A model generated the notes under the pieces. The model was not told the DNA's origin and searched no databases. It saw only the letters and a list, made by a program, of their open reading frames with translations. This document shows positions 15,801 to 38,403 of a stretch of 64,000 nt of DNA, piece after piece; position 1 is the stretch's first letter, and each line of letters begins with the position of its first letter. Made by a program: the position numbers and the translations under genes. This DNA comes from Pristiophorus japonicus (taxonomy: Eukaryota), in the NCBI RefSeq assembly GCF_044704955.1, contig NC_092006.1, positions 4,836,001-4,900,000 of the forward strand. The letters run 5' to 3'.

Positions 15801-18800
15801 AGGAGTCGGCCATTTGGCTCCACAGCTGGTCTGGTCTCGGGCTCAGCTCTACTTCCCTGTCTGATAGATAGACAGACAGACATAGAGATAGAGATAGAGA
15901 GAGAGTTAGAGAGTTAGAGAGAGAGAGGGAGATAGAGAGAGAGAGAGAGGGAGATAGATAGATAGAGAGTTAGAGAGAGAGAGATAGATAGATAGAGAGT
16001 TAGAGATAGAGAGTTAGAGTTAGAGATAGAGAGTTAGAGATAGAGATAGAGAGTTAGAGATAGAGATAGAGAGTTAGAGATAGAGATAGAGAGTTAGAGA
16101 TAGAGAGTTAGAGATAGAGAGTTAGAGATAGAGAGTTAGAGAGATAGATAGATAGAGTTAGAGATAGAGAGTTAGAGATAGAGAGTTAGAGAGATAGATC
16201 GATTGGATAGGCTGGGTTGTTTTCTTTGGAACAGAGGAGACTGAGGGGCGACCTTATTGAGGTGTATAAAATTATGAGGGGCCTGGATAGAGTGGATAGG
16301 ACAGACCTGTTTCCCTTGGCAGAGGGGTCAACAACCAGGGGTCACAGATTGAAAGTAATTGGGAGGAGGTTTAGAGGGGATTTGAGGGGAAATGTCTTCA
16401 CCCAGAGGGTGGCGGGGGTCTGGGGTGGAACTCACTGCCTGAAAGGGTGGTAGAGGCAGAAACCCTCACCACATTTAAAAAGCACCTGGATGTGCGCTTG
16501 AAGTTCCGTAACCTACAGGGCTACGGACTGAGAGCTGGAAAGTGGGATTAGGCTGGGTGGCTCTTTGTCGGCCGGCGCAGACATGATGGGCCGAATGACC
16601 TCCTTCCATGCTGTAAATTTCTATGATTCTAGGATAGACATCGCGATAGAACACAGCACAGTGGAAATGTAATCACATTTTCGACTTTTAAGCAGGGAGG
16701 TACCTTACTCCGAACATTTATTCCCTAGCTAGACAGATAGACTTCAAAATTCAGCAAGGTAGACACTGAAACATTGAGAGATATGTGATAGGGAGATCAT
16801 GGTATAATTATACACGGAGACGCAGAAAAGGACGTAAGAATATAAGAACATAAGAAATAGGAGCAGGAGTCGGCCATTCGGCCCCTCGAGCCTGCTCCGC
16901 CATTCAATACGATCCTGGCTGATCCGATCATGGACTCAGCTCCACTTCCCCGCCCACTCCCCATAACCCTTCACTTCCTTATCGCTCAAAAATCTGTCTA
17001 TCTCCACCTTATATATATTCAATGTCCCAGCCTCCACAGCTCTCTGGAGCCGAGAATTCCACAGATTTACAACCCTCTGAGAGAAGAAATTCCTCCTCAT
17101 CTCAGTTTTAAATGGGCGGCCCCTTATTCTGAGACTATGCCCCCTAGTTCTAGTCTCCCCCATCAGTGGAAACATCCTCTCTGCATCCACCTTGTCGAGC
17201 CCCCTCATTATCTTATACGTTTCGATAAGATCACCTCTCATTCTTCTGAACTCCAATGAGTAGAGACCCAACCTGCTCAACCTTACCTAAGAAGTCAACC
17301 CCCTCATCTCCGAAATCAACCAAGTGAACCTTCTCTGAACTGCCTCCAGTGCAAGTATATCCTTCCTTAAATACGGAGACCAAAACTGCACGCAGTACTC
17401 CAGGTGTGGCCTCACCAATACCCTCTCCAGTTGTAGCAGGACTTCTCTGCTTTTATACTCTATCCCCCTTGCAATAAAGGCCAAGATTCCATTCCAGTTG
17501 AGGTCTAAGATTGGCCGTGATCTTATTGAATGGCAGAGCAGGCTCGAGGGGCCGAATGGCCTCCTCCTGCTCCTAATTCGTATATTCTAAAATAGAGGTT
17601 AGACTGAACAGTAACCGACATATCGTAGAGGGTTGTTGAGGCCAGTCTGTTAGATATATTAAAGAGGAAGCTAGATATGGCCCTTACAGCTAAAGGGATC
17701 AAGGGGTATGGAGAGAAAGCAGGAATGGGGTACTGAGGTGAATGATCAGCCATGATCATATTGAATGGTGGTGCAGGCTCGAAGGGCCGAATGGCCTACT
17801 CCTGCACATATTTTCTATGTTTCTATGTAAGGACAGTGGCTAAATACAGCGCTATGTATTCTGAATTCCCTGTCATTCTTCTGAACTCCAGTCCTTCAAT
17901 ATACAAAAAGTTGCGAAGAAGTGAGACTCACATCACCATTGAAGATATTAGTGAAGGGGACACCGGCCACAGTTACCTCCCGGAGATGCGACGCTTTCAC
18001 TCAGGAGATCCCCGGTGGCGTTGATCGGAACGGTGCAAGTGCAGACGGCGCCGCTGCGCCAGGTTTCGGCCGAGACGCTCAGGACGCTTCTGGCGGTATA
18101 GCTCCCGTCCGGCTCCAGCCTGCCGGGCTCGCTCCGTCCCTCGGCGGCCCGTCCCGCAACCAGCCAGCGGATGGGGAAGGAGTCCGGAGCAGCGCCCCGC
18201 ACCAGACACATCAAGGGCACTCTCTCCAGCCGGGGAATCTCAGCCGGCGGTGGCGTTAAGAGGAAGAGGACCGGGGGGCCCGCTAGATGGAAGAGAAATT
18301 GGAATTAACCAGGCGCACAAGGTAGGTTTAAATTGGTGTCTCGACGCACAATTGGATGGACGAGTGGGATTACCTGTGATCACCAGCGTGGTGCCAGTCC
18401 CGAATATCAGGGACCGATTCCTGGCGTTTGGAGCAGCGCAGTAATACCGCCCAGAATCGCTCCTCTGGACGTTGTCAATGACCAGCGAATAATTCCCCGA
18501 TTGCTCGCATACCTCGCCGGAAAATCTTCCCCCGGGCCTCACGAACCGTCCGGTTTTGTAAACAATCCGCATGCCCTCTCGGTGCCAGTGTGTGTACCAG
18601 TAAACGATGCCCGGGGCCAGCCTCCCGGTCTGGCATTGCAGTTTGACCAGGCTCGCGACATCGGCCGTTAGCAGCGCCGGAAATTGGCTCAAGACCGCCT
18701 GAGACACGACAGCTGAGACAAGGTTGCGGGGGGGGGGGACACAAAAATTAAAAAAAACACAATATTAACAACAGGTTATAGGCCCCCGAGTCACCCTGGA

Positions 18801-21800
18801 TACCGACACATCTCAAATTCCCCTCCACTGGCGCGTCGGGAGCGCGTGTGGGACATTCCGCCGCGCTGCGCACCGTTAAATTGCGCCTCTCCGCCCGCAA
18901 TTCCCACAGGCGCACAGTCCGAGTCCGTTCGCTGTGAAATCCGCTCCAATCATTGGCGAGCACCATGGCGACTGGCTGCAGTTAAGATTGCAAAATCCTT
19001 CTCCCAAACCGATTATGCTTCCCCTGGTCTAACCCGGCTCTCCAATCCATCTCTCCAGGGGTTGGGGACCGGGGGGCGCTTGATTGTGTTAAAATGGGGC
19101 GATAGCTTTCTCACTAATTCCACTAGACAGGCCCCCCTCTCCCAACGGTAGACCCTCGCCTTCAAATACCGGAGTTCACTGACAACTTTATCTCAGTTAG
19201 GGGGCAGTTCAGTGTCACATTCGCTTCCACTCACCCATCACAATGTTCGGCTCCAAAGTCGCGCTATCGGTATTGAGCGAAGCCCGCACACCTTTATACT
19301 TTGCCCAATATCTAATCTGCTTCTTAAAAAAATTATAGTTAAACGCAAACTTGTGTATCAGCGAACGATGCAACACAGGAGGCCATTCGGCCCATCAAAC
19401 CTGTGTTGTGCCGGCTCTGTGACAGAGCGACTCAATCATTCCCACTCCGCCCCTGCTCTTTCCCCACAGCCCGGCATATTGCCTCCTTTCCAAATATTTA
19501 TCCAATTCCCCCGTTTGAAAGTCACTTTTTCATCTGCTCCCAGTGCCCCTTTCAGGCAGCGCGTTCCCGAGCACAAGCTCTCAGGGCTTGAAATCACGTC
19601 CTGAACTCCCCCTCTGGTTCTGTTACCGATTATCTTAAACAAGTGTCCTCTGCTTCCCCACCCTCCTCCCACTGGAAACAATCTCTCCTTCTTTACTCGA
19701 TCGGAAACCTTCTCCTTATTAATTCTATAAAAACCCTTCTCCTTATTAATTCTCTCCAAAACCCTTCTCCTTATTAATTCTCTCCAAAACCCGTCTAAAA
19801 TCCAAAATCCAAAAGAGTAGGAGTAAACGGGTACTTTTCAGAATGGCAGGCAGTGACTAGTGGAGTGCCGCAAGGTTCTGTGCTGGGGCCCCAGCTGTTT
19901 ACATTGTACATTAATGATTTAGACGAGGGGATTAAATGCAGTATCTCCAAATTTGCGGATGATACTAAGTTGGGTGGCAGTGTGAGCTGCGAGGAGGATG
20001 CTATTAGGCTGCAGAGTGACTTGGATAGGTTAGGTGAGTGGGCAAATGCATGGCAGATGAAGTATAATGTGGATAAATGTGAGGTTATCCACTTTGGTGG
20101 TAAAAACAGAGAGACAGACTATTATCTGAATGGTGACAGATTAGGAAAAGGGAAGGTGCAACGAGACCTGGGTGTCATGGTACATCAGTCATTGAAGGTT
20201 GGCATGCAGGTACAGCAGGCGGTTAAGAAAGCAAATGGCATGTTGGCCTTCATAGCGAGGGGATTTGAATACAGGGGCAGGGAGGTGTTGCTACAGTTGT
20301 ACAGGGCCTTGGTGAGGCCACACCTGGAGTATTGTGTACAGTTTTGGTCTCCTAACTTGAGGAAGGACATTCTTGCTATTGAGGGAGTGCAGCGAAGGTT
20401 CACCAGACTGATTCCCGGGATGGCGGGACTGACCTATCAAGAAAGATTGGATCAACTGGACTTGTATTCACTGGAGTTCAGAAGAATGAGAGGGGACCTC
20501 ATAGAAACGTTTAAAATTCTGACGGGTTTAGACAGGTTAGATGCAGAAAGAATGTTCCCAATGTTGGGGGAGTCCAGAACCAGGGGTCACAGTCTGAGGA
20601 TAAGGGGTAAGCCATTTAGGACCGAGATGAGGAGAAACTTCTTCACCCAGAGAGTGGTGAACCTGTGGAATTCTCTACCACAGAAAGTAGTTGAGGCCAA
20701 TTCACTAAATATATTCAAAAGGGAGTTAGATGAAGTCCTTACTACTCGGGGGATCAAGGGTTATGGCGAGAAAGCAGGAAGGGGGTACTGAAGTTTCATG
20801 TTCAGCCATGAACTCATTGAATGGCGGTGCAGGCTAGAAGGGCTGAATGGCCTGCTCCTGCACCTATTTTCTATGTTTCTATGTTTCTATGTCTCCTTAT
20901 TAATTCTCTCCAAAACCCTTCTCCTTATTAATTCGCTCCAAAACCCTTCTCCTTATTAATTCGCTCCAAAACCCTTCTCCTTATTAATTCTCTACAAAAT
21001 CCTTCCCCTTATTAATTCGCTCCAAAACCCTTCTCCTTATTAATTCTAACCAAAACCCTTCTCCTTATTAATTCTCTCCAAAACCCTTCTCCTTATTAAT
21101 TCGCTCCAAAACCCTTCTCCTTATTAATTCGCTCCAAAACCCTTCTCCTTATTAATTCTCTACAAAATCCTTCCCCTTATTAATTCGCTCCAAAACCCTT
21201 CTCCTTATTAATTCTAACCAAAACCTTTCTCCTTATTAATTCGCTCCAAAACCCTTCTCCTTATTAATTCTAACCAAAACCCTTCTCCTTATTAATTATC
21301 TCCAAAATCGTTCTCCTTATTAATTCGCTCCAAAACCCTTCTCCTTATTAATTCTAACCAAAACCCTTCTCCTTATTAATTCTCTCCAAAACCCTTCTCC
21401 TTATTAATTCTATCCAAAACCCTTCTCATTATTAATTCACTCCAAAACCCTTCTCCTTATTAATTCTCTCCAAAATCCTTCTCATTATTAATTCTCTCCA
21501 AAACCCTTCTCATTATTAATTCTCTCCAAAACCCTTCTCCTTATTAATTCTATCCAAAATCCTCCTCCTTATTAATTCTCTCCAAAACCCTCCTCCTTAT
21601 TAATTCTCTCCAAAACCCTTCTCCTTATTAATTCTATCCAAAACCCTTCTCCTTATTAATTCTATCCAAAACCCTCCTCCTTATTAATTCTCTCCAAAAC
21701 CCTTCTCCTTATTAATTCTCTCCAAGACCCTTCTCCTTATTAATTCTCTCCAAGACCCTTCTCCTTATTAATTCTCTCCAAAACCCTTCTCCTTATTAAT

Positions 21801-22901
21801 TCTCTCCAAAACCCTTCTCCTTATTAATTCTATCCAAAACCCTTCTCCTTATTAATTCTCTCCAAAACCCTTCTCCTTATTAATTCTCTCCAAAACCCTT
21901 CTCATTATTAATTCTCTCCAAAACCCTTCTCCTTATTAATTCTCTCCAAAACCCTTCTCCTTATTAATTCGATCCAAAACCCTCCTCCTTATTAATTCTC
22001 TCCAAAACCCTTCTCCTTATTAATTCTCTCCAAGACCCTTCTCCTTATTAATTCTCTCCAAGACCCTTCTCCTTATTAATTCTCTCCAAAACCCTTCTCC
22101 TCATTAATTCTCTCCAAAACCCTTCTCCTTATTAATTCTATCCAAAACCCTTGTCCTTATTAATTCTCTCCAAAATCCTCCTCCTTATTAATTCTCTCCA
22201 AAACCCTTCTCATTATTAATTCTCTCCAAAACCCTTATCCTTATTAATTCTATCCAAAATCCTCCTCCTTATTAATTCTCTCCAAAACCCTCCTCCTTAT
22301 TAATTCTCTCCAAAACCCTTCTCCTTCTTAATTCTCTCCAAAACCCTTCTCCTTCCTAATTCTATCCAAAACCCTTCTCCTTATTAATTCTATTCAAAAC
22401 CCTCCTCCTTATTAATTCTCTCCAAAACCCTTCTCCTTATTAATTCTCTCCAAGACCCTTCTCCTTATTAATTCTCTCCAAGACCCTTCTCCTTATTAAT
22501 TCTCTCCAAAACCCTTCTCCTTATTAATTCTCTCCAAAACCCTTCTCCTTATTAATTCTATCCAAAAACCTTCCCATTATTAATTCTCTCCAAAACCCTT
22601 CTCCTCATTAATTCTATCCAAAACCCTTCTCCTTATTAATTCTCTCCAAAACCCTTTTCCTTATTAATTCTCTCAAAAACCCTTCTCCTTATTAATTCTC
22701 TCCAAAACCCTTTTCCTTATTAATTCTCTCAAAAACCCTTCTCCTTATTAATTCTCTCCAAAACCCTTTTCCTTATTAATTCGCTCCAAAACCCTTCCCT
22801 TGGTTGACTCTCTCCTAACCCCTTCCCCACTCTGGCAAAACATCGAAGGCTATCTCACCTTGGAAGAGATGGAACAGCACACAGAGACCACAGAAGCTCA
22901 T
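12831..22901 (-). CDS. Gene B: non-rearranging VJ-C1-TM-ITIM receptor, 5 coding exons, 279 aa
   Basis: Exons 22901-22859, 18712-18374, 18282-17977, 15550-15444 and 12875-12831. Total 840 nt, open frame. Confidence 0.85.
12935..14628 (-). mobile_element. CR1 fragments (12935-13735, 14078-14628) and a LINE/SINE 3' end (13870-14075) in the last intron of gene B
   Basis: RRNFFTQR motifs; CR1 tails. Confidence 0.7.
14629..15068 (+). mobile_element. Probable non-autonomous element with an RTE-type 3' tail
   Basis: Ends cgagggactgcctataatgatgat, like the RTE 3' end at 9380-9405; the body is non-coding. Confidence 0.45.
15444..15550 (-). CDS. Gene B stalk and TM exon (V)SPSQSACGLRLVLNLLAALLLLLMVSVAAVRSGSQ
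   Basis: Acceptor ctcttttcttgcag, donor cag|gtaggg; 107 nt ending in phase 0; homologous to gene A exon 4 minus 10 nt. Confidence 0.85.
15860..16200. repeat. Compound microsatellite (AGAGAT/AGAGTT)n
   Basis: Direct observation. Confidence 0.95.
16200..17828. mobile_element. CR1 fragments in gene B intron 3 (16200-16630 plus, 16835-17490 minus, 17628-17828 plus)
   Basis: CR1 RT C-terminal ORFs and tails. Confidence 0.8.
17977..18282 (-). CDS. Gene B C1-type Ig domain exon
   Basis: 306 nt; (A)[54 protein letters not shown]..; ag| and |gtaact ends. Confidence 0.93.
18374..18712 (-). CDS. Gene B VJ exon
   Basis: 339 nt; [41 protein letters not shown]; donor acag|gtaatc. Confidence 0.94.
19705..22800. 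repeat. 28-bp minisatellite CCTTCTCCTTATTAATTCTCTCCAAAAC in gene B intron 1, interrupted by a CR1
   Basis: Period 28; about 68 copies in 20893-22800 plus about 3 before the insertion. Confidence 0.95.
19811..20892 (+). mobile_element. Young 5'-truncated CR1 (uninterrupted 312-aa RT C-terminal ORF)
   Basis: GVPQGSVLGP..FADD..; (TTCTATGT)n tail; same subfamily as 38404-41256 and 51587-55130. Confidence 0.95.
22859..22901 (-). CDS. Gene B leader exon [14 protein letters not shown]
   Basis: ATG plus 43 nt, donor caag|gtgaga; splicing gives [26 protein letters not shown]. Confidence 0.83.
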
Positions 22902-22984
22902 TATCCCTGCCCCAGGAGGGTTGAACTCTGATGCTGGGACTGGCAGCTCAGGGAGGAATGCTTGTCAGCAGGTCGGTGCGAGGC

Positions 22985-23145
22985 TGGTGTGAAATGCCGA
23001 GCCAATTGTGGTAAGCACGCACTGTGTTTATTAATAAATGTACGATTTGGGCTGCAAAATAGTGCCGAAGCAGAAAGCTCTGTGTGGGTTTCCTGTTTTT
23101 ACAGGTAAAGAGATGAAACACACACACACCATCTGTGTTACAGAA
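22985..23145 (-). promoter_or_regulatory. Gene B proximal promoter
   Basis: AACAGGAAACCCACA at 23083-23097 (minus strand), TTTATTAATAAA, GCATTTCAC. Confidence 0.5.
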
Positions 23146-23599
23146 GGCACCTCGTCTCTACGCATGTTAGTTTGACCACACTTGGAGCACTGCGCACGGT
23201 TCTGGTCTCCATCTTTCAAAAGAATATAGAGGCACTGGAGCGGGTGTAAACAAGATTCAGAAAGATGACACCAGAACTGAGAGAGGTTATACTGATCAGG
23301 AAAGGCTGGACAGACTGGGGCACTTTTCTCCAGAAAATTACATAGTATGCACATCACAAAAACAGACCATTCAGCCCCACCGCTCCGTGCCGGGGTTTAT
23401 GCTCCACACCAGCCCCTCCCACCTCTCTCCATCTCACCCCATTCGCCATATCCTTCTATTCCTTTCTCCCTCATGTGTTTATCCAGCCTCCCCTTAAATA
23501 CATCGATACTATTCGCCTCAACCCCTCCCTATGGCAGCGAGTTCCACATCTCAGCGCTCTCTGGGTCAAGAAGTTTCTCCTGAATTCCCCATTGGGTTT

Positions 23600-25070
23600 A
23601 TAAGAACATAAGAAACAGGAGCAGGAGTAGGCCATTCGGCCCCTCGAGCCTGCTCTGTCATTTAGTACGATCATGGCTGATCTGATCATGGACTCAGCTC
23701 CACTTCCCTGCCCGCCCCCTTATTCCCTTATCGTTTAAGAAACTGTCTTAAATTTATTCAATGTCCCAGCTTCCACAGCTCTCTGAGGCAGCAAATTCCA
23801 CAGATTTACAACCCTCTGAGAGAAGAAATTTCTCCTCATCTCAGTTTTAAATGGGCGGCCCCTTATTCTAAGACCATGCCCCCTAGTTCTAGTCTCTCCC
23901 ATCAGTGGAAACATCCTCTCTGCATCCACCTTGTCAAGCCCCCTCATAATCTTATATGTTTCGATAAGATCACCTTTCATTCTTCTGAATTCCAATGAGT
24001 AGAGGCCCAACCTACTCAACCTTTCCTCATAAGTCAACCCCCTCATCCCCGGAATCAACTGAGTGAACCTTCTCTGAACTGCCTCCAAAGCAAGTATATC
24101 CTTTCGTAAATATGGAAACCAAAACTGCACGCAGTACTCCAGGTGTGGCCTCACCAATACCCTGTATAACTGTAGCAAGACTTCCCTGCTTTTATACTCC
24201 ATCCCCTTTGCAATAAAGGCCAAGATTCCATTGGTCTTCCTGATCACTTGCTGTACCTGCATACTATCCTTTTGTGTTTCATGCACAAGTACCCCCAGGT
24301 CCCGCTGTACTGCAGCACTTTGCAATCTTTCTCCATTTAAATAATAACTTGCTCTTTGATTTTTTTCTGCCAAAGTGCATGACTTCACACTTTCCAACAT
24401 TATACTCCATCTGCCAAATTTTTGCCCACTCACTTAGCCTGTCTCTGTCCTTTTGCAGATTTTTTGTGTCCTCCTCACACATTGCTTTTCCTCCCATCTT
24501 TGTATCATCAGCAAACTTGGCTACATTACACTCAGTCCCTTCTTCCAAGTCATCAATCTAGATTCCAAGTCGCCAATACAACACTGATCCCTGCGGCACC
24601 CCCCCTAGATACAGATTGCCAATCTGAGAATGAACCATTTATCCCGACTCTCTGTTTTCTATTTGTTAGCCAATCCTCTATCCATGCTAATATATTGCCC
24701 CCAACCCCGTAAACTTTTATCTTGTGCAGTAACCTTTCATGTGGCACCTTGTCAAATGCCTTCTGGAAGTCCAAATACACCACATCCACTGGTTCCCCTT
24801 TATCCATCTTGTTCATTACATCCTAAAAGAATTCCAGCAAATTTGTCAAACATGACTTCCCCTTCATAAATCCATGCTGACTCTGCCTGACCCAATTTTG
24901 CTTTTCCAAATGTCCTGCTACTGCTTCTTTAATAATGCACTCCAACATTTTCCCGACCACAGATGTTAGGCTAACTGGTCTATAGTTTCCTGCTTTTTGT
25001 CTGCCTCCTTTTTTAAATAGGGGCGTTACATTTGAAGTTTTCCAATCTGCTGGGACCTCTGCAGAATCCA
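23600..25070 (-). mobile_element. CR1 ORF2 fragment with frameshifts and an internal disruption
   Basis: [33 protein letters not shown]. Confidence 0.9.
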
Positions 25071-25299
25071 TTTATGAGTGACTGTCTTATATCGATGGCC
25101 CCCTCGTTCTGGTCTTCTCCCTCAAGTTGGAAGCATCTCTATTGTGAGGCAGAAGTGGATATGATCCATTCAGACTTCCCTATAATGGTGGTGAGCACAT
25201 ATTTGAGGTATGGAGAACCCAGATGCAATGAAAATGGGTTAAGAATGTAAAAAAACACAAGATAAGGCCCGAGGACTGTGCAAGAAACAGACCTGGGAA

Positions 25300-25650
25300 A
25301 CATAGACATAGAAACACAGAAAATAGGTGCAGGAGCAGGCCATTCGACCCTTCGAGCCTGCACCACCATTCAATATGATCATGGCTGATCATGCAACTTC
25401 AGTACCCCATTCCTGCTTTCTCTCCATACCCCCTTGATCCCTTTAGCCGTAAGGGCCACATCTAACTCCTTTTTGAATATATCCAACGAACTGGCCTCAA
25501 CAACTTTCTGTGGTAGAGAATTCCACAGGTTCACAATTCTCTGAGTGAAGAAGTTTCTCCTCATCTCGGTCCTAAATGGCTTATCCCTTATCCTTAGACT
25601 GTGACCCCTGGTTCTGGACTTCCCCAACATCGGGAATATTCTTCCTGCAT
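25300..25650 (-). mobile_element. CR1 3' fragment
   Basis: DAGRIFPMLGKSRTRGH..; tail present. Confidence 0.85.
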
Positions 25651-26194
25651 CTAGAATTGGCTTCGAAAAGGCGGATCCCAAACAATAGTGAGAGTTAATA
25701 ACTAACTTTACTGCATGCATTTCTGTTCGAACTATAAACGAGGTCAGGTGTAATCGAATAAACAGGGCTCGACGATTTCTGGAGACTGGGGCAAACCGGG
25801 TTCAACTGGGTGCTGTCTGTAATACACGTGTCTTAATTTCCAGAATTATCCAGATAACCAATTATTCACACGAGTGAATCTAGGTAAATAAGATTAACTT
25901 GCAGCACAACTCATTGCAAAATCCGTCGTCGCCTTTGAGGATTGATGGAACTTTATGTCAGAATATATGGGTTTAAAAAGAACAAGTTATGCCAGAAAGC
26001 AGCAGTAAGGGTGTGTTACCAGCTATAATCCGCAAACTCTGTATAAAACGTTGAGGGGGCTTGGAACCAGAAAAGCCAGCGTGTTGCAGACAATGTGCTG
26101 TCCCAGTATGGAGATCTGTGCTCCAATTTATTCTGTCCCAGGCCTCAAATCAGCAAATGGGCGGTTTGGTCACTCCTGGGAATCGCCACTTCTA

Positions 26195-26508
26195 TCATCG
26201 CGGCATCCCCACCGACACCTGGGAGTCCCTGTGGCCAAAGACCGGTTCGCCCCAAGTGGAGGAAGTGCATCCGGGAGGGCGCTGAGCACCTCGAGTCTGG
26301 TCGCCGAGAGCGTGCAGAAACCAAGCGCAGGCAGCGGAAGGAGCGTGCGGCAAACCTGTCCCACCCTCCCCTTACCCTCAACCACTGTCTGTCCCACCCG
26401 TGACAGGGGACTGTGGCTCTCGTATTGGACTGTTCGGCCACCGAAGGACTCATGCTAAGAGTGGAAGCGAGTCTTCCTCGATTCCGAGGGTCTGCCGACG
26501 ATGATGAT
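26195..26508 (+). mobile_element. RTE-clade LINE 3' fragment
   Basis: Homologous to 9105-9405; (GAT)n tail. Confidence 0.75.
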
Positions 26509-26934
26509 TATATTGTAGGACAGCTCTGTCTTCTACGTCGATGTGTATGCGCGTCGTGCACAACGGTTGATTCACATCCGAATCATTGAAAGATTTGTTT
26601 GCCAGTGATATCAAGGGCTTTTATTTTGCACTGGAAGTTGAGAATAAATGGACCTGAAACGGGAAGTTCTACTGACAGCACTGCGGTATAGCGCCGGCTA
26701 GCGATGAAATTGATGTTGTGCAACCCCCCCCCCAAAGGCCAGTTATCGCACTCAGTACCCCAGGGTGAGAGGTTCCTTGGGTATTTGACGATCCGGACAT
26801 TTCTTTGGCCAGTACCGCGCGGACCCACTAATTCAAGAGGACTGGCGGGTCAGTGCTCAGTTGAAATCTGATAACCCCCACACAACAGAGAAATGCAGTT
26901 CATTGCAGGGGTCCCGCAAATAACCCATCTTTTA

Positions 26935-27395
26935 GCACCAGGAGGAGGCCATTCAGCCCCTCGAGCCTGCGGTTCCATTCAGTTAGCTCATGGGCTGATC
27001 TGTATCTTAACCCCATCCACCTGCCTTGGTCCCGTAACCCTGAATACCCTTACCCAACAAATAGCTATCCATCTTAGTTTTGACATTTTACAATTGCCCC
27101 CTCGCGCCCCCCCCCAGCCTCGACAGCTTTCTGAGGGAGAGAGTTCCACATTGCCACTACCCTTTGTGTGAAGAAGGGCTTCCTGACATCAACCCTCAAT
27201 GGCCTGGCTCTAATTTTAAGGTGACATCCCCTTGTTCTGGACTCCCCCCACCAAGAGGCCATAGTTTCTCTCAATCTACCCCCTCAACTCCTTCAATCAT
27301 CTTAAATACTTCAAATAGATCATTCCTTGATCTTCTATATTCAAGAGAATTCAAGCCTCGTCCATGCAAACGGTCCTCACAATTGAACTCTTTCC
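26935..27395 (-). mobile_element. Old CR1 3' fragment
   Basis: ESRTRG..FFTQRVV..WNSLPQKAVE. Confidence 0.75.
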
Positions 27396-27399
27396 CATA

Positions 27400-28065
27400 G
27401 TGTCAGCTGTGGTTGTGGGTAGCACACTCGTCTCAGAGTCAGAAGGTCATCGGTTCAAGTCCCACTCCAGGAACTTGAGCATATAAATCCAGGATGGCAC
27501 TCCCAGTGCAGTGCTGAGGGAGCGCCGCACTGTCGGAGGGGCGGTGCTGAGGGAGCGCCGCACTGTCGGAGGGGCGGTGCTGAGGGAGCGCCGCACTGTC
27601 GGAGGGGCGGTGCTGAGGGAGCGCCGCACTGTCGGAGGGGCAGTGCTGAGGGCGCGCCGCACTGTCGGAGGGTCCGTACTGAGGGAGTGCCGCATTGTCA
27701 TAGGGACGATACTGAGGGAGCGCCGCACTGTCGGAGGTGCTGTCTTTCAGATGAGACATTTAAACCGAGGCCCTGTCTGCCCTCTCAAGTGGATGTAAAA
27801 GATCCCATGGCACTATTTCGAAGAAGAGTAGGGGAGTTATCTCTGGTTCTTGGCCAATATTTATCCCTCAATCTACAAAGCAGATGATCTGGGTCATTAT
27901 CACATTGCTGTGTGTGGGAGCTTGCTGTGCGCAAATTCAGCTGCCGCGTTTCTCACATTACAACAGTAACTATACTCCAAAAGTACTTCATTGCTGTAAA
28001 GCGCAGTTTGAGACATCCAGTGGTCATGAAAGGCGCTCTATAACTGCAATGGTTTTCTTCTTTCT
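27400..28065 (+). mobile_element. Near full-length tRNA-derived Deu-domain SINE (SacSINE1-like) with an internal 33-bp array (27510-27740)
   Basis: tRNA-like head with B-box GGTTCAAGTCC; core gatgagac..taaaccgagg..aaagatcccatggcact; tail gaaaggcgctctataa. The family name is from recollection, not a search. Confidence 0.75.
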
Positions 28066-28907
28066 AGCCCCTGCATAATGTATCTGTTTAAGTCTCAAAT
28101 GAGGTACTGTATACTGGGATTACTCCAACCCCGGTAGATTTCTCTATTTGAACTAACCGGAACTACGCGTGAGTTGGATAAAATTTACCAAAGATATTTG
28201 ATAGCATTCCATTGCTACCACAAGTCACACACCACCTCGGGATTTCCGGATCTGCTTTACAGCCAACGGAGCAACATTTTCAAGTGTGGTCACTGGTGCA
28301 ATGTCGGGACACGCGGCCAATTTCCGCACAGCAAGCTCCCACAAACTCACGCTTACCAAAAGAAAATCACTAAACTGGCTGTAAAGCGCGTTGGGACGTC
28401 CTGATGTCGTGAAAGGCACTATATAAATTCCCTAAATTAAGAAGTGTGGGTTATAGACAGGCCCCAGTCTCTAGAACTTGTCGGTCCCTGTTTACCGATT
28501 ACACCTAGTTCGAACAGAAATGCACACAGTAAAGTTAGTTATTTATTCTCAATATTGTTTCCGATCCTCCTTTTCTAAGAGGAGCCAATTCTAGTTCTCG
28601 GGTCTGTTTCTTGCACAGTCCTCGGGCCTTATCTTGTGTGTTTTTACATTCTTAACACGTCTACATTACATCTGACTTCTCCATACCTCAAATATGTGCT
28701 CACCCCCCACCCCGTTATAGAGAAGGCTGTATGGATCCTATCCACTACCGTCTCACAATAGAGATGTTTCCACTTGTGGGAGAGCCTAGATCTAGGGGGC
28801 CATCACTATACGACAGTCACCCATAAATCCAATGGGGAATTCAGGAGAAACTTCATCACCCAGAAAATGGGGAGAATGTGGAACTCGCTGCCAAAGGGAG
28901 GGGTTGA

Positions 28908-29280
28908 AACATAGAATCATAGAAAATAGGTGCAGGAACAGGCCATTCGGCCCTTTGAACCTGCACCACCATTCAATATGATCATGGCTGATCATGCAAC
29001 TTCAGTACCCCATTCCTGCTTTCTCTCCATACCCCCTTGATCCCTTCAGCCGTAAGGACCACATCTAACTCCCTTTTGAATATATCCAACGAACTGGCCT
29101 CAACAACTCTCTGCAGGAGAGACTTCCACAGGTTCACAATTCTCTGAGTGAAGATGTTTCTCCTCATCTCGGTCCTAGATGGCTTACCCCTTATCCTGAG
29201 AGTGTGACCCCTGGTTCTGGACTTCCCCAACATCGGGAACATTCTTCCTGCATCTACCCGGTCCAATCCCGGCAGAATCT
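28908..29280 (-). mobile_element. CR1 3' fragment present only in the gene C arm
   Basis: Interrupts homology with the 23520 region. Confidence 0.85.
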
Positions 29281-29654
29281 GAGGCGAATAGTATCGATGC
29301 ATTTAAGGGGAGGCTGGATCAACACATGAGGGAGAAAGGAATAGAAGGATATGGGGATGGGGTGAGATGGAGAGTGGTGGGAGGGGCTGGTGTGGAGCAT
29401 AAACCCCGGCACGGAGCGGTGGGGCTGAATGATCTGTTTCTGTGATGTACATTCTCTCTAATTTTCGAGAGAAAAGTGCCCCAGTCTGTTGAGCCTTTCC
29501 TGATCAGTATAACCTCTCTCAATTCTGGTGTCATCTTTCTGAATCTTGTTTACACCCGCTCCAGTGCCTCTATATTCTTTTGAAAGATGGAGACCAGAAC
29601 CGTGCGCAGTGCTCCAAGTGTGGTCAAACTAACATGCGTAGAGACGAGGTGCCT

Positions 29655-29815
29655 TCTGTAACACAGATGGTGTGTGTGTGTTTTATCTCTTTACCTGTAA
29701 AAACAGGAAACCCACACAGAGCTTTCTGCCTTGGCACTATTTTGCAGCCCAAATCGTACATTTATTAATAAACACAGTGCGTGCTTACCACAATTGGCTC
29801 GGCATTTCACACCAG
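29655..29815 (+). promoter_or_regulatory. Gene C proximal promoter
   Basis: AACAGGAAACCCACA at 29702-29716, TTTATTAATAAA at 29761, GCATTTCAC at 29802. Confidence 0.5.
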
Positions 29816-29897
29816 CCTCGCACCGACCTGCTGACAAGCATTCCTCCCTGAGCTGCCAGTCCCAGCATCAGAGTTCAACCCTCCTGGGGCAGTGATA

Positions 29898-29940
29898 ATG
29901 AGCTTCTGTGGCCTCTGTGTGCTGTTCCATCTCTTCCAAG
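29898..29940 (+). CDS. Gene C leader exon [14 protein letters not shown]
   Basis: atgagcttc...ttccaag|gtgaga, 43 nt. Confidence 0.84.
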
Positions 29941-32900
29941 GTGAGATAGCCTTCGATGTTTTGCCAGAGTGGGGAAGGGGTTAGGAGAGAGTCAACCAAG
30001 GGAAGGGTTTTGGAGCGAATTAATAAGGAAAAGGGTTTTGGAGAGAATTAATAAGGTGAAGGGTTTTGGAGGGAATTAATAAGGAGAAGGGTTTTGGATA
30101 GAATTAATGAGGAGAAGGGTTTTGGAGAGAATTAAAAAGGAGAAGGGTTTTGGAGGGAATTAATAAGGAGAAGGGTTTTGGAGAGAATTAAAAAGGAGAA
30201 GGGTTTTGGAGGGAATTAATAAGGAGAAGGGTTTTGGATAGAATTAATAAGGAGAAGGGTTTTGGAGAGAATTAAAAAGGAGAAGGGTTTTGGAGGGAAT
30301 TAATAAGGAGAAGGGTTTTGGATAGAATTAATGAGGAGAAGGGTTTTGGAGAGAATTAATAAGGAGAAGGGTTTTGGATACAATTAATCAGGAGAAGGGT
30401 TTTGGATAGATTTAATAATGAGAAGGGTTTTGGATAGAATTAATAAGGAGAAGGGTTTTGGAGAGAATTAATAAGGAGAAGAGTTTGGATAGATTTAATA
30501 ATGAGAAAGGTTTTGGATAGAATTAATAAGGAGAAGGGTTTTGGAGAGAATTAATAAGGAGAAGGGTTTTGGAGAGAATTAATAACGAGAAGGGTTTTGG
30601 AGAGAATTAATAAGGAGAAGGGTTTTGAATAGATTTAATAATGAGAAGGGTTTTGGATAGAATTAATAATGAGAAGGGTTTTGGATAGAATTAATAATGA
30701 GAAGAGTTTGGATAGATTTAATAATGAGAAAGGTTTTGGATAGAATTAATAAGGAGAAGGGTTTTGGAGAGAATTAATAAGGAGAAGGGTTTTGGATACA
30801 ATTAATAAGGAGAAGGGTTTTGGATACAATTAATAAGGAGAAGGGTTTTGGATAGAATTAATAAGGAGACGAGTTTGGATAGATTTAATAATGAGAAAGG
30901 TTTTGGATAGAATTAATAAGGAGAAGGGTTTTGGATACAATTAATAAGGAGAAGGGTTTTGGATAGATTTAATAATGAGAAGGGTTTTGGATAGAATTAA
31001 TAAGGAGAAGGGTTTTGGAGAGAATTAATAAGGAGAAGGGTTTTGGAGAGAATTAATAAGGAGAAGGGTTTTGAATAGATTTAATAATGAGAAGGGTTTT
31101 GGATAGAATTAATAAGGAGAAGGGTTTTGGATAGAATTAATAAGGAGAAGGGTTTTGGAGAGAATTAATAAGGAGAAGGGTTTTGGATAGAATTAATCAG
31201 GAGAAGGTTTTGGAGAGAATTAATAAGGAGAAGGGTTTTGGAGAGAATTAATGAGGGGAAGGTTTTGGAGAGAGTTAATAAGGAGGAGGGTTTTGGAAAG
31301 CATTAATAAGGAGAAGGGATTTGGAGAGAATTAATAAGGAGAAGGGTTTTGGATAGAATTAATAATGAGAAGGTGTTTTGGATAGAATTAATAATGAGAA
31401 CGGTTTTGGATAGAATTAATAAGGAGAAGGGTTTTGGAGAGAATTAATAAGGAGAAGGGTTTTGGCTAGATTTAATAATGAGAAGGGTTTTGGATAGAAT
31501 TAATAATGAGAAGGGTTTTGGAGAGAATTAATAAGGAGAAGGTGTTTTGGATAGAATTAATAATGAGAACGGTTTTGGATAGAATTAATAAGGAGAAGGG
31601 TTTTGGAAAGAATTAATAAGGAGAAGGGTTTTGGAGAGAATTAATAATGAGAACGGTTTTGGATAGAATTAATAATGAGAAGGGTTTTGGATAGAATTAA
31701 TAAGGAGAAGGATTTTGGAAAGAATTAATAAGGAGAAGGGTTTTGGATAGATTTAATAAGGAGAAGGGTTTTGGATAGATTTAATAAGGAGAAGGGTTTT
31801 GGATAGAATTAATAATGAGAAGGGTTTTGGATAGAATTAATAAGGAGACGGGTTTTGGATAGAATTAATAAGGAGAAGGTTTCCGATCGAGTAAAGAAGG
31901 AGAGATTGTTTCCAGTGGGAGGAGGGTGGGTAAGCAGAGGACACATGTTTGAGATAATCGGTAACAGAACCAGAGGGGGAGTTCAGGACGTGATTTCAAG
32001 CCCTGGGAGCTTGTGCTCGGGAACGCGCTGCCTGAAAGGGGCACTGGGAGCAGATGAAAAAGTGACTTTCAAACGGGGGAATTGGATAAATATTTGGAAA
32101 GGAGGCAATATGCCGGGCTGTGGGGAAAGAGCAGGGGCGGAGTGGGAATGATTGAGTCGCTCTGTCACAGAGCCGGCACAACACAGGTTTGATGGGCCGA
32201 ATGGCCTCCTGTGTTGCATCGTTCGATGATACACAAGTTTGCGTTTAACTATAATTTTTTTAAGAAGCAGCTTAGATATTGGGCAAAGTATAAAGGTGTG
32301 CGGGCTTCGCTCAATACCGATCGCGCGACTTTGGAGCCGAACATTGTGATGGGTGAGTGGAAGCGAATGTGACACTGAACTGCCCCCTAACTGAGATAAA
32401 GATGTCAGTGAACTCCGGTATTTGAAGGCGAGGGTCTGCCGTTGGGAGAGGGGGGCCTGTCTAGTGGAATTAGTGAGAAAGCTATCGCCCCATTTTAACA
32501 TAATCAAGCGCCCCCCGGTCCCCAACCCCTGGAGAGATGGATTGGAGAGCCGGGTTAGACCAGGGGGAAGCATAATCGGTTTGGGAGAAGGCTTTTGCAA
32601 TCTTAACTGCAGCCAGTCGCCATGGTGCTCGCCAATGATTGGAGCGGATTTCACAGCGAACGGACTCGGACTGTGCGCCTGTGGGAATTGCGGGCGGAGA
32701 GGCGCAATTTAACGGTGCGCAGCGCGGCGGAATTTCCCACACGCGCTCCCGACGCGCCAGTGGAGGGGAATTTGAGATGTGTCGGTATCCAGGGTGACTC
32801 GGGGGCCTATAACCTGTTGTTAATATTGTGTTTTTTTAATTTTTGTGTCCCCCCCCCCGCAACCTTGTCTCAGCTGTCGTGTCTCAGGCGGTCTTGAGCC

Positions 32901-35900
32901 AATTTCCGGCGCTGCTAACGGCCGATGTCGGGAGCCTGGTCAAACTGCAATGCCAGTCCGGGAGGCTGGCCCCGGGCATCGTTTACTGGTACACACACTG
33001 GCCCCGAGAGGGCATGCGGCTCGTTTACAAAACCGGACGGTTCGTGACGCCCGGGGGAAGATTTTCCGGCGAGGTATGCAAGCAATCGGGGAATTATTCG
33101 CTGGTCATTGACAATGTCCAGAGGAACGATTCTGGGCGGTATTACTGCGCTGCTCCAAACGCCGGGAATCGGACCCTGATATTCGGGACTGGCACCACGC
33201 TGGTGATCACAGGTAATCCCACACGCCCATCCAATTGTGCGTCGAGACACCAATTCAAACCTGCCTTGTGCGCCTGGTTAATTCCAATTTCCCTTCCATC
33301 TAGCGGGCCCCCCGGTCCTCTTCCTCTTAACGCCGCCGCCGGCTGAGATTCCCCGGCTGGAGAGGGTGCCCTTGATGTGTCTGGTGCGGGGCGCTGCTCC
33401 TGACTCCTCCCCCATCCGCTGGCTGGTTGCGGGACGGGCCGCCGAGGGACGGAGCGAGCCCGGGACGCTGGAGCCGGACGGGAGCTATACCGCCAGAAGC
33501 GTCCTGAGCGTCTCGGCCGAAACCTGGCGCAGCGGCGCCGTCTGCACTTGCACCGTTCCGATCAACGCCACCGGGGATCTCCTGAGTGAAAGCGTCGCGT
33601 CTCCGGGAGGTAACTGGAGCTACTGGCGGTTTGCCAAATAGTTAGTGATAATAATGTTCATTATAGTATTGCTGGGATGTGAGGGTTTTTTTTGCACGAG
33701 AGATTGTGTAGAATGGGCCTATGTTCTCTGGAGTTTCGTATAAGATGATGAGGGGGCTTGACAAGCTGGATGCAGAGAGGATGTTTCCACTGATGGGGGA
33801 GTCTAGAACTAGAGGGCATAATCTCAGAATAAGGGGCCGCCCATTTAAAACTGAGATGAGGAGGAATTTCTTCTCTGAGGGTTGTAAATCTGTGGAATTC
33901 GCTGCCTCAGAGAGCTGTGGAAGCCGGGACATTGAGTAAATTTACGATAGAAATAGACAGTTTCTTAACTGATAAGTAATTAAGGGGTTATGGGGAGCGG
34001 GCAGGGAAGTGGAGCTGAGTCCATGATCGGATCAGCCATGATCGTATTGAATGGCGGAGCAGGCTCGAGGGGCCGAATGGCCGACTCCTGCTCCTATTTC
34101 TTATGTTCTTATGGAGTTTCGAAGAAGGAGAGGTGATCTCATTGAAACGTACAAGACTCTGAGGGGGATTGACAGGGTGGATGCAGGGAGGGTGTTTCCC
34201 CCCGGGGCTGGGGAGTCTAGAACCAGGGGTCACACAGTCTCAGGGTAAGGGGTTGGCCATTTAAGACTAAGATGGGGAGAACGTTCTTCACTTGCGATTT
34301 ACTACGTTACAGGCGCTATATAAATATAAGTTGTTGTATATTGGGAGCACTAGTATGGAAAAGTAGTATTTTATAAATGACATGAGTTTGGAAAACAGCG
34401 AGACAGAGAGAGACCATATACACAAACCTGTAAATGTGGGAAGGGCAGGTTGGCGAGCTGGTTAAACTGGCTTACGGGGTACTTGAATTTATATAAGGAG
34501 ATATTGGAACAGTTGACCAAAAGCTTGGTCAAAGAGGGAGGTTTTACAGAAGGAGGAGAGGCGGAGAGGTTTAGGGAGAGAGTTCCAGAGCTTGGGGCCC
34601 CAGGCAGCTGAAGGCACGGCCACCAATGGTGGAGCGATAGAAATCGGGGGGAATGCTCAAGAGGCCAGGATTGGAAGAGCGCAGAGATCACAGCCACTTA
34701 CGTTGAGACAGTTCATAGTTCGTCACCATGTCTTTGATGATTCGGGCCAAAAACCAGCTTCAAACCCTCAGCGGACGAGGTTTCAGAATTTGACTGAATT
34801 ATTTTGTGTTTCGCTCATTTCACAAGAGTTGTCTTTCTGCCGTTCAGAGCCCCTTCACAGCTCGACCTGCCGCTTCGCGCTTTATGCCAGCCTGGCGATG
34901 GCTCCTCTTGTGATGGGGTTGATCGGTGTCGCGGTGGCACGGCGTGGCAAGACTCGCCAACCAGGTACTGCCCGTCTGAGCCAAACCCTCAATTTCGCCT
35001 TTAGCTGAACCTCTCCCTTTGGCGTGCCGGCCTGGACATTAACGCCAGTCATCTTCTTAAACCTAGAGAGTGCAGCCACGACTGACCGAGGTACCGCTTC
35101 AAGAATAAAGAAAGCAGAAGAGGAGGTAGGTGCCACAAAGATGGGAGATGTTATTTTCATTAAAGAGCGGGGGGCGGGACTAATTGGATCATGCTTTCAA
35201 AGAGCCGACACAAGCTCGAAGGGCCAACTAGCCTCCTTCTGTGCTGTAAGATTCTATACTGGTGTCAAGTGTTTCATTGGTGTCCATGGACATGTCCGTT
35301 GTCAGTAACTTCAATGAGACATTCACATTAATACACTTGTGCCTCTCTCAGAAACAACCCAAAGCTATTCACCTGCAATGAATTGCATAAGAACATAAGA
35401 ACATAAGAATTAGGAACAGGAGTAGGCCATCTAGCCCCTCAAGCCTGCTCCACCATTCAACAAGACCATGGCTGATCTGGACGTGGACTCAGCTCCACTT
35501 ACCCGCCCGCTCCCGTAACCCTTAATTCCCTTATTGGTTAAAAATCTATCTATCTGTGACTTGAATGCATTCAATGAGCTAGCCTCAACTGCTTCCTTGG
35601 GCAGAGAATTCCACAGATTCACAACCCTCTGGGAGAAGAAATTCCTTCTCAACTCGGTTTTAAATTGGCTCCCCCGTATTTTGAGGCTGTGCCCCCTAGT
35701 TCTAGTCTCCCCGACCAGTGGAAACAAACTCTCTGCCTCTATCTTGTCTATCCCTTTCATTATTTTAAATGTTTCTAGAAGATCACCCCTCATCCTTCTG
35801 AACTCCAACGAGTAAAGACCCAGTCTACTCAATCTATCATCATAAGGTCACCCCCTCATCTCCGGAATCAGCCGAGTGAATCGTCTCTGTACCCCCTCCA

Positions 35901-38395: not shown

Positions 38396-38403
38396 GAGGA
38401 CAG

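What the first reader, a model, noticed from the sequence alone, without database searches (positions are those of the whole stretch)
17970..33615. Arm-to-arm homogenisation made gene B a chimera: C-type ectodomain on an A-type TM and tail
Seen: B and C are near-identical from the promoter to the C1 donor (VJ 11/339 and C1 7/306 nt differences). Identity stops within a few bases of the C1 donor (gtaactg). Beyond it, the B intron, TM exon and last exon resemble gene A (e.g. CATCACCATTGAAGATATTAGTGAAGG at 6636 and 17931), not gene C. The inner arms (25070-25790 vs 28460-28830) are homologous but much more diverged, with independent CR1 insertions. Inference: an old inverted duplication followed by recent gene conversion, or inversion by recombination, limited to the ligand-binding half. 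This would swap recognition and signalling modules, as is known for paired receptors such as SIGLEC5/14 and SIGLEC11/16.
Basis: partly seen in the sequence, partly recalled or inferred. Interest (0 to 1): 0.82.

Follow-up and report, generated by a model that had tools for sequence, protein, structure and literature searches.

The report
Shark receptor genes sharing one ectodomain
Two head-to-head sawshark immune-receptor genes carry almost the same outer, ligand-binding half inside an inverted repeat that stops at a splice site, while their membrane and tail parts have different origins: a known way for immune receptor families to evolve, seen here in an apparently undescribed shark family.

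Summary
Genes B (- strand) and C (+ strand) are head-to-head germline-joined VJ-C1-TM receptor genes of Pristiophorus japonicus. They lie in an inverted repeat, 17970-23520 against 33616-29280. Identity is 97-98% from promoter to C1 (VJ 11/339 and C1 7/306 differences) and ends 7 nt after the C1 donor. Further inward the arms continue at only 85-89%, each interrupted by its own LINE insertions. This fits an old inverted duplication whose genic part was recently homogenised.

3' of the junction B matches A: 32/34 nt at the start of intron 3, 49/60 nt before the last exon, and a LINE end at the same spot in both genes. C has its own complete but divergent TM, cytoplasmic and tail exons.

- The chimeric junction is probably as old as the inner arms and was not made by the recent homogenisation.
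- The direction cannot be fixed. A-B synonymous divergence is equal in C1 and TM, which favours C as the recipient.
- B's TM exon is only weakly A-like.
- All three tails keep the same TxYAxLAF motif, so there is no SIGLEC5/14-type opposite signalling.
- No B transcript was seen.

The scan has noted this family elsewhere in the same genome.

The parts
17970..23520 (-). B arm of the inverted repeat (recently homogenised part): B promoter, leader, intron 1, VJ, V-C intron, C1 and 7 nt of intron 3
   Evidence: Self-BLAST 17970-19796 vs 33616-31790 at 97.5%; 20913-23520 vs 31882-29280 at 92.8% (array alignment ambiguous). Per-block identities 94.5-98.3%.
29280..33616 (+). C arm of the inverted repeat (recently homogenised part)
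22859..22901 (-). Gene B leader exon ([14 protein letters not shown], 43 nt, donor GTGAGA)
   Evidence: Six-frame search with the P0001 leader and the sequence context.
18374..18712 (-). Gene B germline-joined VJ exon (339 nt)
   Evidence: Pfam V-set E = 3.5e-10; canonical AG/GT; 11 differences from C.
17977..18282 (-). Gene B C1 exon (306 nt), donor G|GTAACTG
   Evidence: Pfam C1-set E = 2.3e-9; 7 differences from C.
17927..17976 (-). Junction in B: B/C identity ends at 17970; an 8-nt stretch absent from A follows; the A-like block 17927-17960 is 32/34 identical to A 6632-6665
16719..16828 (-). Second unique A-like block in B intron 3 (about 70% to A 6484-6586)
15444..15550 (-). Gene B TM exon (107 nt, 10 nt shorter than in A and C, ends in phase 0)
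   Evidence: 69% nt and 43% aa to A. A DNA contig of run X1 covers 15251-15752 without any difference.
12831..12875 (-). Gene B last coding exon (TLYAQLAFNTEPTL, stop)
12876..12975 (-). End of B's last intron: 60 unique nt, 49/60 identical to A, then the 3' end of a CR1-like LINE at the same distance from the exon (61 nt) as in A (766-800)
19812..20890 (+). Young LINE 3' fragment private to the B arm
   Evidence: 97.7% to 54041-55119; RVT_1 E = 2e-12; absent from the C arm.
20892..22825 (.). 28-bp minisatellite (about 69 copies) in B intron 1
   Evidence: TRF.
29998..31879 (.). 28-bp minisatellite (about 67 copies) in C intron 1; the unit is the reverse complement of B's
   Evidence: TRF.
23518..25792 (.). 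B-side inner (old) arm: homologous blocks 23518-23601, 25070-25299 and 25661-25792, separated by private LINE insertions 23601-25070 and 25300-25660
28461..29280 (.). C-side inner (old) arm: blocks 28461-28579, 28595-28828 and 28823-28907, then a private CR1-like insertion 28907-29280
25793..28460 (.). Central spacer of the inverted repeat; no arm-to-arm homology found
29898..29940 (+). Gene C leader exon
   Evidence: identical to the P0001 N-terminus.
32874..33212 (+). Gene C VJ exon
33304..33609 (+). Gene C C1 exon
34848..34964 (+). Gene C TM exon (117 nt)
   Evidence: Matches P0001 residues 231-268; canonical splice sites.
35067..35125 (+). Gene C 59-nt cytoplasmic exon ([20 protein letters not shown])
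37314..37349 (+). Gene C last coding exon ([11 protein letters not shown], stop)
7054..7392 (-). Gene A VJ exon (a different, ancient V lineage)
   Evidence: Pfam V-set; 39-40% aa to B/C but 57-61% to catshark, skate and stingray genes; tree.
6674..6976 (-). Gene A C1 exon (303 nt)
4664..4780 (-). Gene A TM exon (117 nt)
3230..3288 (-). Gene A 59-nt cytoplasmic exon (GNTASDEKFTDSRPGARDKE)
   Evidence: tblastn with Heterodontus tails; splice context.
628..705 (-). Gene A last coding exon (TLYAQLAFKADPTVRQERKVNSSWI, stop)

Best explanation
B and C are a head-to-head pair of non-rearranging VJ-C1-TM immune-type receptor genes of the Japanese sawshark. They sit in an inverted segmental duplication.

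The duplication is old: the inner arms are about 86% alike. Its outer edge lies at the C1 splice donor. From there inward to about 620 nt upstream of the start codons, the two arms were recently made alike again (97-98%), most likely by gene conversion between the arms. The homogenised stretch stops at the first insertion that is private to one arm.

3' of the edge the two genes have different ancestry. B continues with sequence related by descent to gene A. C continues with its own complete but divergent TM, cytoplasmic and tail exons. B is therefore a mosaic, with a 5' module shared with C and 3' parts shared with A.

Most probably (inferred) the junction arose with the old duplication, or with an equally old exchange, and not with the recent homogenisation.

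The result is two receptors with nearly the same ligand-binding ectodomain but different TM and cytoplasmic segments. Both keep the family's terminal tyrosine motif. After homogenisation the V domains gained mostly replacement changes, while C1 stayed under purifying selection.
For: - Inverted repeat and exact boundary.
- Two identity levels: 97.7, 94.5, 96.8, 98.3 and 97.1% in the outer blocks against 89, 85 and 87% in the inner blocks, p = 5e-20. The step coincides with private LINE insertions.
- Repeat-masked BLAST finds no B-C or A-C hits 3' of the donor, while A-B hits are collinear.
- A-B: no similarity in the leader intron or V-C intron. 44/52 in the first 60 nt of intron 3, 85/100 at the end of the last intron, 32/34 in unique sequence.
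- The jump in A-B identity at the junction has p = 0.004.
- A CR1-like 3' end lies 61 nt upstream of the last exon in both A and B.
- The A and B/C V domains are ancient separate lineages: 39% aa to each other, 54-61% to other species, clade support 99/98. dS(A-B) in VJ is 1.8. The 82-94% A-B intron blocks must therefore be much younger.
- Gene C's exon model equals database protein P0001, 299 aa.
- All splice sites are canonical, and B has an intact 279-codon frame.
- B-C dN/dS is 1.6 in VJ and 0.15 in C1.
- A spliced BC-type transcript with a non-B 3' end is present in run X5.
Against: - dS(A-B) is the same in C1 (0.70) and in TM (0.66), and C's TM is far from both (1.1-1.4). This fits B being native across the junction and C being the recipient.
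- B's TM exon is no closer to A (43% aa) than to Heterodontus genes (46-50%). Its flanks do not align with A. The TM tree is unresolved.
- The jump test at the junction is post hoc and rests on 34-52 nt.
- No listed DNA contig bridges 17956-17987, so the junction rests on the assembly alone.
- No B-type RNA was seen, and B's product is not in the protein database.
Confidence: 0.58

Rival explanations
1. C, not B, is the chimera. B is a native gene (BC-type V on the family-typical constant part, as in Heterodontus). Its promoter-to-C1 module was copied in inverted orientation onto an older, divergent gene, giving C. The A-like blocks in B come from separate short-tract A-B exchanges.
For: - dS(A-B) is 0.70 in C1 and 0.66 in TM, while dS(A-C) is 1.42 and dS(B-C) is 1.12 in TM. 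Third-position identity of C1 (61/100) fits A-B TM (20/35, p = 0.69) better than A-C TM (15/37, p = 0.036).
- B's tail TLYAQLAFNTEPTL fits the family consensus, and C's 3' half is the atypical one.
- Short, patchy A-B similarity fits short conversion tracts.
Against: - It needs two independent events with the same boundary at the C1 donor. A-B identity changes exactly where B-C identity ends.
- The TM exon has only 35-37 codons, so its dS is imprecise.
- C's TM weakly joins a batoid clade (76/78) and its short tail resembles that clade's. This would make C's V plus tail combination native, though long-branch attraction is possible.
Confidence: 0.27
2. There was no gene conversion. Two successive inverted duplications, an old one and a recent re-duplication of the genic part, gave the two identity levels.
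For: The identity profile is a step and not a smooth gradient. The outer part is one contiguous block from the donor to 23520/29280.
Against: A re-duplication would have to land exactly in register on the older arm and replace it, which amounts to conversion. The step lies at a private TE insertion, as expected if heterology stops a conversion tract. The X5 transcript mixes C-like and B-like states, which fits ongoing exchange or shared polymorphism.
Confidence: 0.08
3. Assembly artefact: a false inverted duplication or a mis-join at 17970.
For: No listed DNA contig bridges 17956-17987. At several diagnostic sites the X1 contigs show only one of the two letters.
Against: - The arms differ at 18 exon sites and carry private LINE insertions.
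- Identity decays inward, which haplotigs would not do.
- B-type and C-type pieces both occur in DNA contigs: X1 record 8 is B-type with 0 differences, and X1 record 3 covers B's TM exon with 0 differences.
- NCBI's gene model for C (P0001) matches the window.
- An RNA contig from another sample has a BC-type 5' half with a non-B 3' end.
Confidence: 0.05

Closest known systems
Paired immune receptors kept alike by gene conversion (SIGLEC5/SIGLEC14, SIGLEC11/SIGLEC16)
   Same: Two neighbouring receptor genes have near-identical ligand-binding Ig domains and unrelated membrane and cytoplasmic parts. Identity is maintained by partial gene conversion with a sharp boundary. [quoted passage not shown]
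   Different: The defining opposite signalling is not seen. In SIGLEC pairs one partner is inhibitory through SHP-1 and the other activating through DAP12. Here B and C, and also A, all end in the same T-x-Y-A-x-L-A-F motif. The only charged TM-region residue is an Arg at the outer membrane edge of both B and C. Here the pair is a palindrome with head-to-head promoters, and the promoters are homogenised too.
Elasmobranch VJ-C1-TM-tail family (database proteins P0002-P0026, annotated as immunoglobulin light or heavy chain-like or uncharacterized)
   Same: Same architecture and length (about 280-317 aa), with Pfam V-set and C1-set matches in most members. Shared features are a membrane-proximal PLHxxC, a 59-nt cytoplasmic exon and an ETLYA[RH]LAF tail. 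Heterodontus shows the same kind of incongruence: two V lineages share one species-specific C1 clade and near-identical tails.
   Different: In the sawshark window the exchanged unit is promoter plus V plus C1, with the boundary after C1. In Heterodontus the constant part (C1 to tail) is what looks homogenised across V lineages.
UrIg / UrIg2, non-rearranging antigen-receptor-like genes of elasmobranchs (PMC12227049)
   Same: Non-rearranging, germline-joined VJ followed by C1-type domains in cartilaginous fish. Gene conversion between duplicated exons is documented for UrIg2 C domains.
   Different: As PMC12227049 describes them, UrIg and UrIg2 have several C domains. The genes here have a single C1, then a TM exon and a tyrosine-motif tail. 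I did not compare them directly with a UrIg sequence.
Hybrid genes from unequal crossing-over or segmental exchange in tandem families (Lepore-type haemoglobin, KIR and LILR hybrids; from general knowledge)
   Same: 5' and 3' modules of different paralogs joined at or near a conserved exon edge.
   Different: Here one partner is inverted, so a simple unequal crossover cannot make the B/C relationship. It needs an inverted duplication or inter-arm conversion.

Membership tests
Paired receptors (SIGLEC5/14 type) | Highly homologous extracellular domains in two neighbouring genes | tested here: met
   B-C VJ 96.8% nt / 92% aa; C1 97.7% nt / 98% aa.
Paired receptors (SIGLEC5/14 type) | Concerted evolution of the ectodomain by gene conversion with a defined boundary | tested here: met
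   Outer arms 97-98% against inner arms 85-89%, p = 5e-20. The boundary lies 7 nt after the C1 donor, and the step lies at a private TE insertion. Conversion is inferred from the pattern, not observed.
Paired receptors (SIGLEC5/14 type) | Opposing signalling modules (ITIM-type tail against a short tail with a charged TM residue that recruits an ITAM adaptor) | tested here: not met
   B tail RSGSQ-TLYAQLAFNTEPTL. C tail [39 protein letters not shown]. Both keep the same tyrosine motif, and both have only a boundary Arg next to the conserved Cys. Signalling itself cannot be tested here.
Elasmobranch VJ-C1-TM-tail receptor family | Germline-joined V-set domain with a J-like FGxG motif, followed by one C1-set domain | tested here: met
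   Pfam V-set and C1-set in A, B and C. FGNGSKL and FGTGTTL lie within the V exon.
Elasmobranch VJ-C1-TM-tail receptor family | TM exon with PLHxxC, a cytoplasmic exon, and a last exon opening with TxYAxLAF | tested here: met
   Present in A and C. B has the TM exon (10 nt shorter) and the tail but lacks the 59-nt exon, with the frame preserved.
Elasmobranch VJ-C1-TM-tail receptor family | Sequence homology to family members of other species | tested here: met
   P0001 (gene C) finds 25 elasmobranch proteins at E from 5.5e-92 to 1.0e-39.
UrIg / UrIg2 | Several C domains after the VJ domain | tested here: not met
   Only one C1 exon lies between VJ and TM in all three genes, and in P0001. The UrIg architecture is taken from PMC12227049.
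Rearranging Ig/TCR loci | Separate V and J segments with recombination signal sequences | tested here: not met
   V and J are contiguous in one 339-nt exon in A, B and C. A search for RSS heptamers or nonamers was not run.

The most novel reading that the evidence does not exclude
The B/C palindrome is an early-vertebrate counterpart of a paired-receptor device in an antigen-receptor-like family. An inverted repeat covering both promoters and the whole ectodomain repeatedly copies one binding specificity onto two different membrane and cytoplasmic modules. The V domain then diversifies under positive selection (9 replacement to 2 silent changes; a further transcript variant with 5 more V replacements). 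The arms could also flip the spacer between them by recombination, giving an orientation polymorphism.
Probability: 0.2. Interest if true: 0.7.

Novelty: new member of a known kind. Interest (0 to 1): 0.5.

Why it matters
Modular exchange of ligand-binding and signalling halves is a main way for immune receptor families such as SIGLEC, KIR, LILR and CEACAM to track pathogens. It has been documented mostly in mammals.

Here the same pattern appears in a cartilaginous fish: a sharp conversion boundary at an exon edge, arms of two ages, TE insertions as likely barriers to conversion, and replacement-biased change in V. The family is built like a ready-joined antigen-receptor chain, and I found no description of it in the searchable literature.

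The case gives a concrete, testable locus for asking how V and constant or signalling modules were shuffled in relatives of antigen receptors. It also cautions that single-gene trees of this family will mislead unless they are made module by module.

Tried and rejected
1. C as a bare partial copy of B without 3' exons. Rejected: C has TM, 59-nt and tail exons in frame, equal to P0001.
2. C's 3' half as a distinct ancient lineage with its own orthologues. Not supported by local alignments, where the best hits are again Heterodontus. Only a weak join to batoids appears in the TM tree.
3. The A-B patches 1200-1500 and 13015-13275 as orthologous intron. Downgraded: they are CR1-like fragments, and B's copy is closer to the copy at 27111-27247 (82%) than to A's (78%).
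4. A-upstream against B/C-upstream homology. Only non-collinear, TE-like hits.
6. Read support for B's junction and for B expression. The DNA run is kept as short contigs and none of the listed ones bridges the junction. No B-type RNA was seen, which does not show silence.
7. My first reading of the X5 contig as exactly gene C was wrong and is corrected: 12 of 18 diagnostic sites are C-type, 4-5 are B-type or unreported, one site has a third letter, and 5 more are private.
8. Two paper searches failed on a term shorter than 3 letters.
9. No exon-joined protein model of A or B was built or sent to any search, so no tree of the whole 3' half (TM plus tail) was made. The database protein P0001 was used instead.
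10. The N runs 4943-5279 and 7562-7724 were left as they are. A's leader exon and most of its intron 1 could therefore not be compared.

Full report
**What the window is.**
The window is rich in LINEs and comes from the Japanese sawshark, Pristiophorus japonicus. Gene C's exons translate exactly into database protein P0001 (299 aa, named 'immunoglobulin kappa light chain-like'). It holds three genes of one family and no further VJ or C1 copies. Gene A is on the minus strand at 705-7392. Gene B is on the minus strand at 12831-22901. Gene C is on the plus strand at 29898-37349.

Each gene has a leader exon (not located for A), a germline-joined VJ exon (Pfam V-set), a C1 exon (Pfam C1-set), a TM exon and a last exon opening with T-[LM]-Y-A-[QH]-L-A-F. 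A and C also have a 59-nt cytoplasmic exon. B lacks that exon, and its TM exon is 10 nt shorter, so its frame is preserved: 43+339+306+107+45 nt, 279 codons. All splice sites are canonical.

**The observation.**
- B and C lie head to head in an inverted repeat.
- Identity runs through the donor G|GTAACTG and ends at B 17970 / C 33616. After that B and C are unrelated.
- The quoted 27-mer occurs only at 6636 and 17931.
- With repeats masked, B-C and A-C have no hit 3' of the donor, whereas A-B hits are collinear through the gene.

**Two ages in the arms.**
Block by block, B-C identity is 97.7% in C1, 94.5% in the V-C intron, 96.8% in VJ, 98.3% in the 3' part of intron 1 and 97.1% in leader plus promoter, up to 23520/29280. 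Beyond that point it falls to 89%, 85% and 87% in three inner blocks that reach 25792/28461. The difference is far beyond chance (p = 5e-20).

The step lies at a CR1-like insertion private to the C arm (28907-29280). The next blocks are separated by LINE insertions private to the B arm (23601-25070 and 25300-25660). A young LINE fragment (19812-20890, RVT_1) is private to the B arm. Both first introns hold a 28-bp minisatellite of about 68 copies.

I read this as an old inverted duplication, with about 14% divergence, whose genic part was homogenised recently (2-3% divergence). Heterologies probably limit the conversion tracts. That last point is an inference.

**What lies 3' of the junction.**
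C has its own TM, cytoplasmic and tail exons in the right phases, confirmed by P0001. They are divergent: the TM exon is 21-34% aa identical to anything else in the family.

B's 3' half relates to A, but unevenly:
- 44/52 in the first 60 nt of intron 3, with a unique 34-nt block at 32/34.
- About 70% over the next 100 nt.
- No similarity in the flanks of the TM exon.
- TM exon 69% nt and 43% aa.
- 49/60 in the unique sequence before the last exon, and 38/45 in the first 45 nt of the last exon.

In both A and B the 3' end of a CR1-like element lies exactly 61 nt upstream of the last exon (A 766, B 12936). I take this as a shared insertion, hence common descent. Other apparent A-B patches (1200-1500 and 13015-13275) are LINE fragments and were set aside.

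**Outgroups.**
P0001 recovers 25 proteins of the same architecture from sharks and rays. A's V domain is 39-40% identical to B/C's, but 57-61% identical to those of catshark, skate, basking shark and stingray. B/C's V is closest to Heterodontus, at 54-55%. In the V tree, A sits in a clade with 99/98 support that excludes B/C. dS(A-B) in VJ is 1.8.

A and B therefore carry ancient, separate V lineages. The 82-94% A-B intron blocks 3' of the junction must come from a much younger relationship. A-B identity rises from 26/40 in the last 40 nt of C1 to 32/34 just inside the intron (p = 0.004, post hoc). This happens at the same place where B-C identity ends.

**Why the reading is only partly supported.**
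1. B and C share nothing 3' of the donor, although the old arms are still 85-89% alike. So the old repeat already ended at the donor, or one 3' half was replaced later. The old-arm divergence (about 14%) is similar to A-B divergence in the young blocks (15-18%). The chimeric junction is thus probably old, and the recent homogenisation only refreshed the identity.
2. Direction is open. dS(A-B) is 0.70 in C1 and 0.66 in TM, while C's TM is at 1.1-1.4 from both. C1 third positions (61/100 identical) fit A-B TM (20/35) better than A-C TM (15/37, p = 0.036). This is what one expects if B is native and C received B's 5' module. The TM-exon tree is unresolved, and C joins a batoid clade only weakly (76/78, long branches).
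3. Local alignments do not show C's 3' half to be a separate old lineage.
4. The analogy to SIGLEC5/14 fails on the defining feature given in PMC6288428, which is opposing signals. All three tails keep the same tyrosine motif, and B and C both have only a boundary Arg beside the conserved Cys.

**Selection and expression.**
Since homogenisation, B and C differ by 9 replacement and 2 silent changes in VJ (dN/dS 1.6). In C1 they differ by 2 replacement and 5 silent changes (dN/dS 0.15). The contrast is borderline (p = 0.049).

Runs of the same organism were laid on B (window 12820-18720). One run from another sample (X5) holds a 1,111-nt spliced contig lying exactly on 17977-18282 and 18374-18714. 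Its further 364 nt do not lie on B's 3' exons. It is BC-type and nearer to C. It has the C letter at 12 of 18 diagnostic sites and a third letter at one (18185). At five sites no difference from B is reported, one of which (17987) lies at the end of the laid piece. It also has 5 private differences. This makes 5 amino-acid differences from C in V and 1 in C1. It could be an allele of C, a third BC-type paralog or a contig chimera.

No contig of the three small runs that I take to be RNA (their kind is not on record) touches B's TM exon, and no B-type letters were seen at the sites that are C-type. Contigs show presence, not absence. A DNA contig covers B's TM exon without any difference, but no listed DNA contig bridges 17956-17987. 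The junction therefore rests on the assembly.

**Context in the family.**
In Heterodontus francisci two V lineages share one species-specific C1 clade and nearly identical TM and tail sequences. Module-wise exchange thus seems general in this family.

UrIg and UrIg2 (PMC12227049) are the nearest described non-rearranging relatives, but they have several C domains. I found no description of the two-domain membrane family in the searchable library. Earlier notes of this scan report further clusters of it in the same genome, and their follow-up agents also found no description. Those notes are leads, not evidence.

**Limits.**
- The N runs were not filled or looked up.
- No exon-joined model of A or B was built or searched, so there is no tree of the whole 3' half.

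**Verdict.**
This is a real and well-defined case of modular mosaicism: an old inverted duplication with recent inter-arm homogenisation limited to promoter plus ectodomain. It sits in an apparently undescribed shark receptor family. The mechanism is of a known kind. The direction of transfer, the age of the chimeric junction and the use of gene B remain open.

Noticed in passing
window 20892-22825 and 29998-31879: A 28-bp minisatellite of about 69 and 67 copies lies inside intron 1 of B and C (units are reverse complements). The arrays are about 91-93% alike in any register, so the array belongs to the homogenised arms.
   Followed up: partly
window 18374-18712 / 32874-33212 and run X5 contig: A BC-type transcript from another sample differs from reference C by 8 nt (5 aa) in VJ and 3 nt (1 aa) in C1, and shares three amino-acid states with B. 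One of its private variants (18491 A>G) is also at about half depth in the DNA run X1. This suggests high V-domain polymorphism, B/C exchange or a third paralog.
   Followed up: partly
proteins P0002-P0004, P0006, P0012 (Heterodontus francisci): Two V lineages (P0002-4 against P0006/P0012) share one species-specific C1 clade (92/91) and near-identical TM and tail sequences. V and constant-part trees therefore disagree in another species of the family.
   Followed up: partly
window 12831-15550: B's TM exon is 107 nt against 117 nt in A and C, and B has no 59-nt cytoplasmic exon. The two changes together keep the frame, giving a 19-residue cytoplasmic part that still carries the tyrosine motif.
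   Followed up: partly
window 17966-17976, 6660-6673, 33610-33640: Reading through the C1 donor gives short in-frame tails before a stop: [35 protein letters not shown]. Intron retention could give secreted forms. This was not tested.
   Followed up: no
window 38397-40145 and 52269-55119: A long LINE ORF with endonuclease and reverse-transcriptase domains (Exo_endo_phos, RVT_1), and a second copy 95.8% identical. The family looks recently active and supplied the young insertion in the B arm.
   Followed up: partly
window 1623-2547, 27511-27737, 43394-45169, 48445-48910: Several further tandem arrays: a 38-nt period in A's last intron, a 33-nt array in the B/C spacer, and long 33-nt arrays downstream of C.
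   Followed up: no
window 766-800 and 12936-12975: The 3' end of a CR1-like element lies 61 nt upstream of the last exon in both A and B. In A a younger LINE copy (about 801-1180) is nested behind it.
   Followed up: partly
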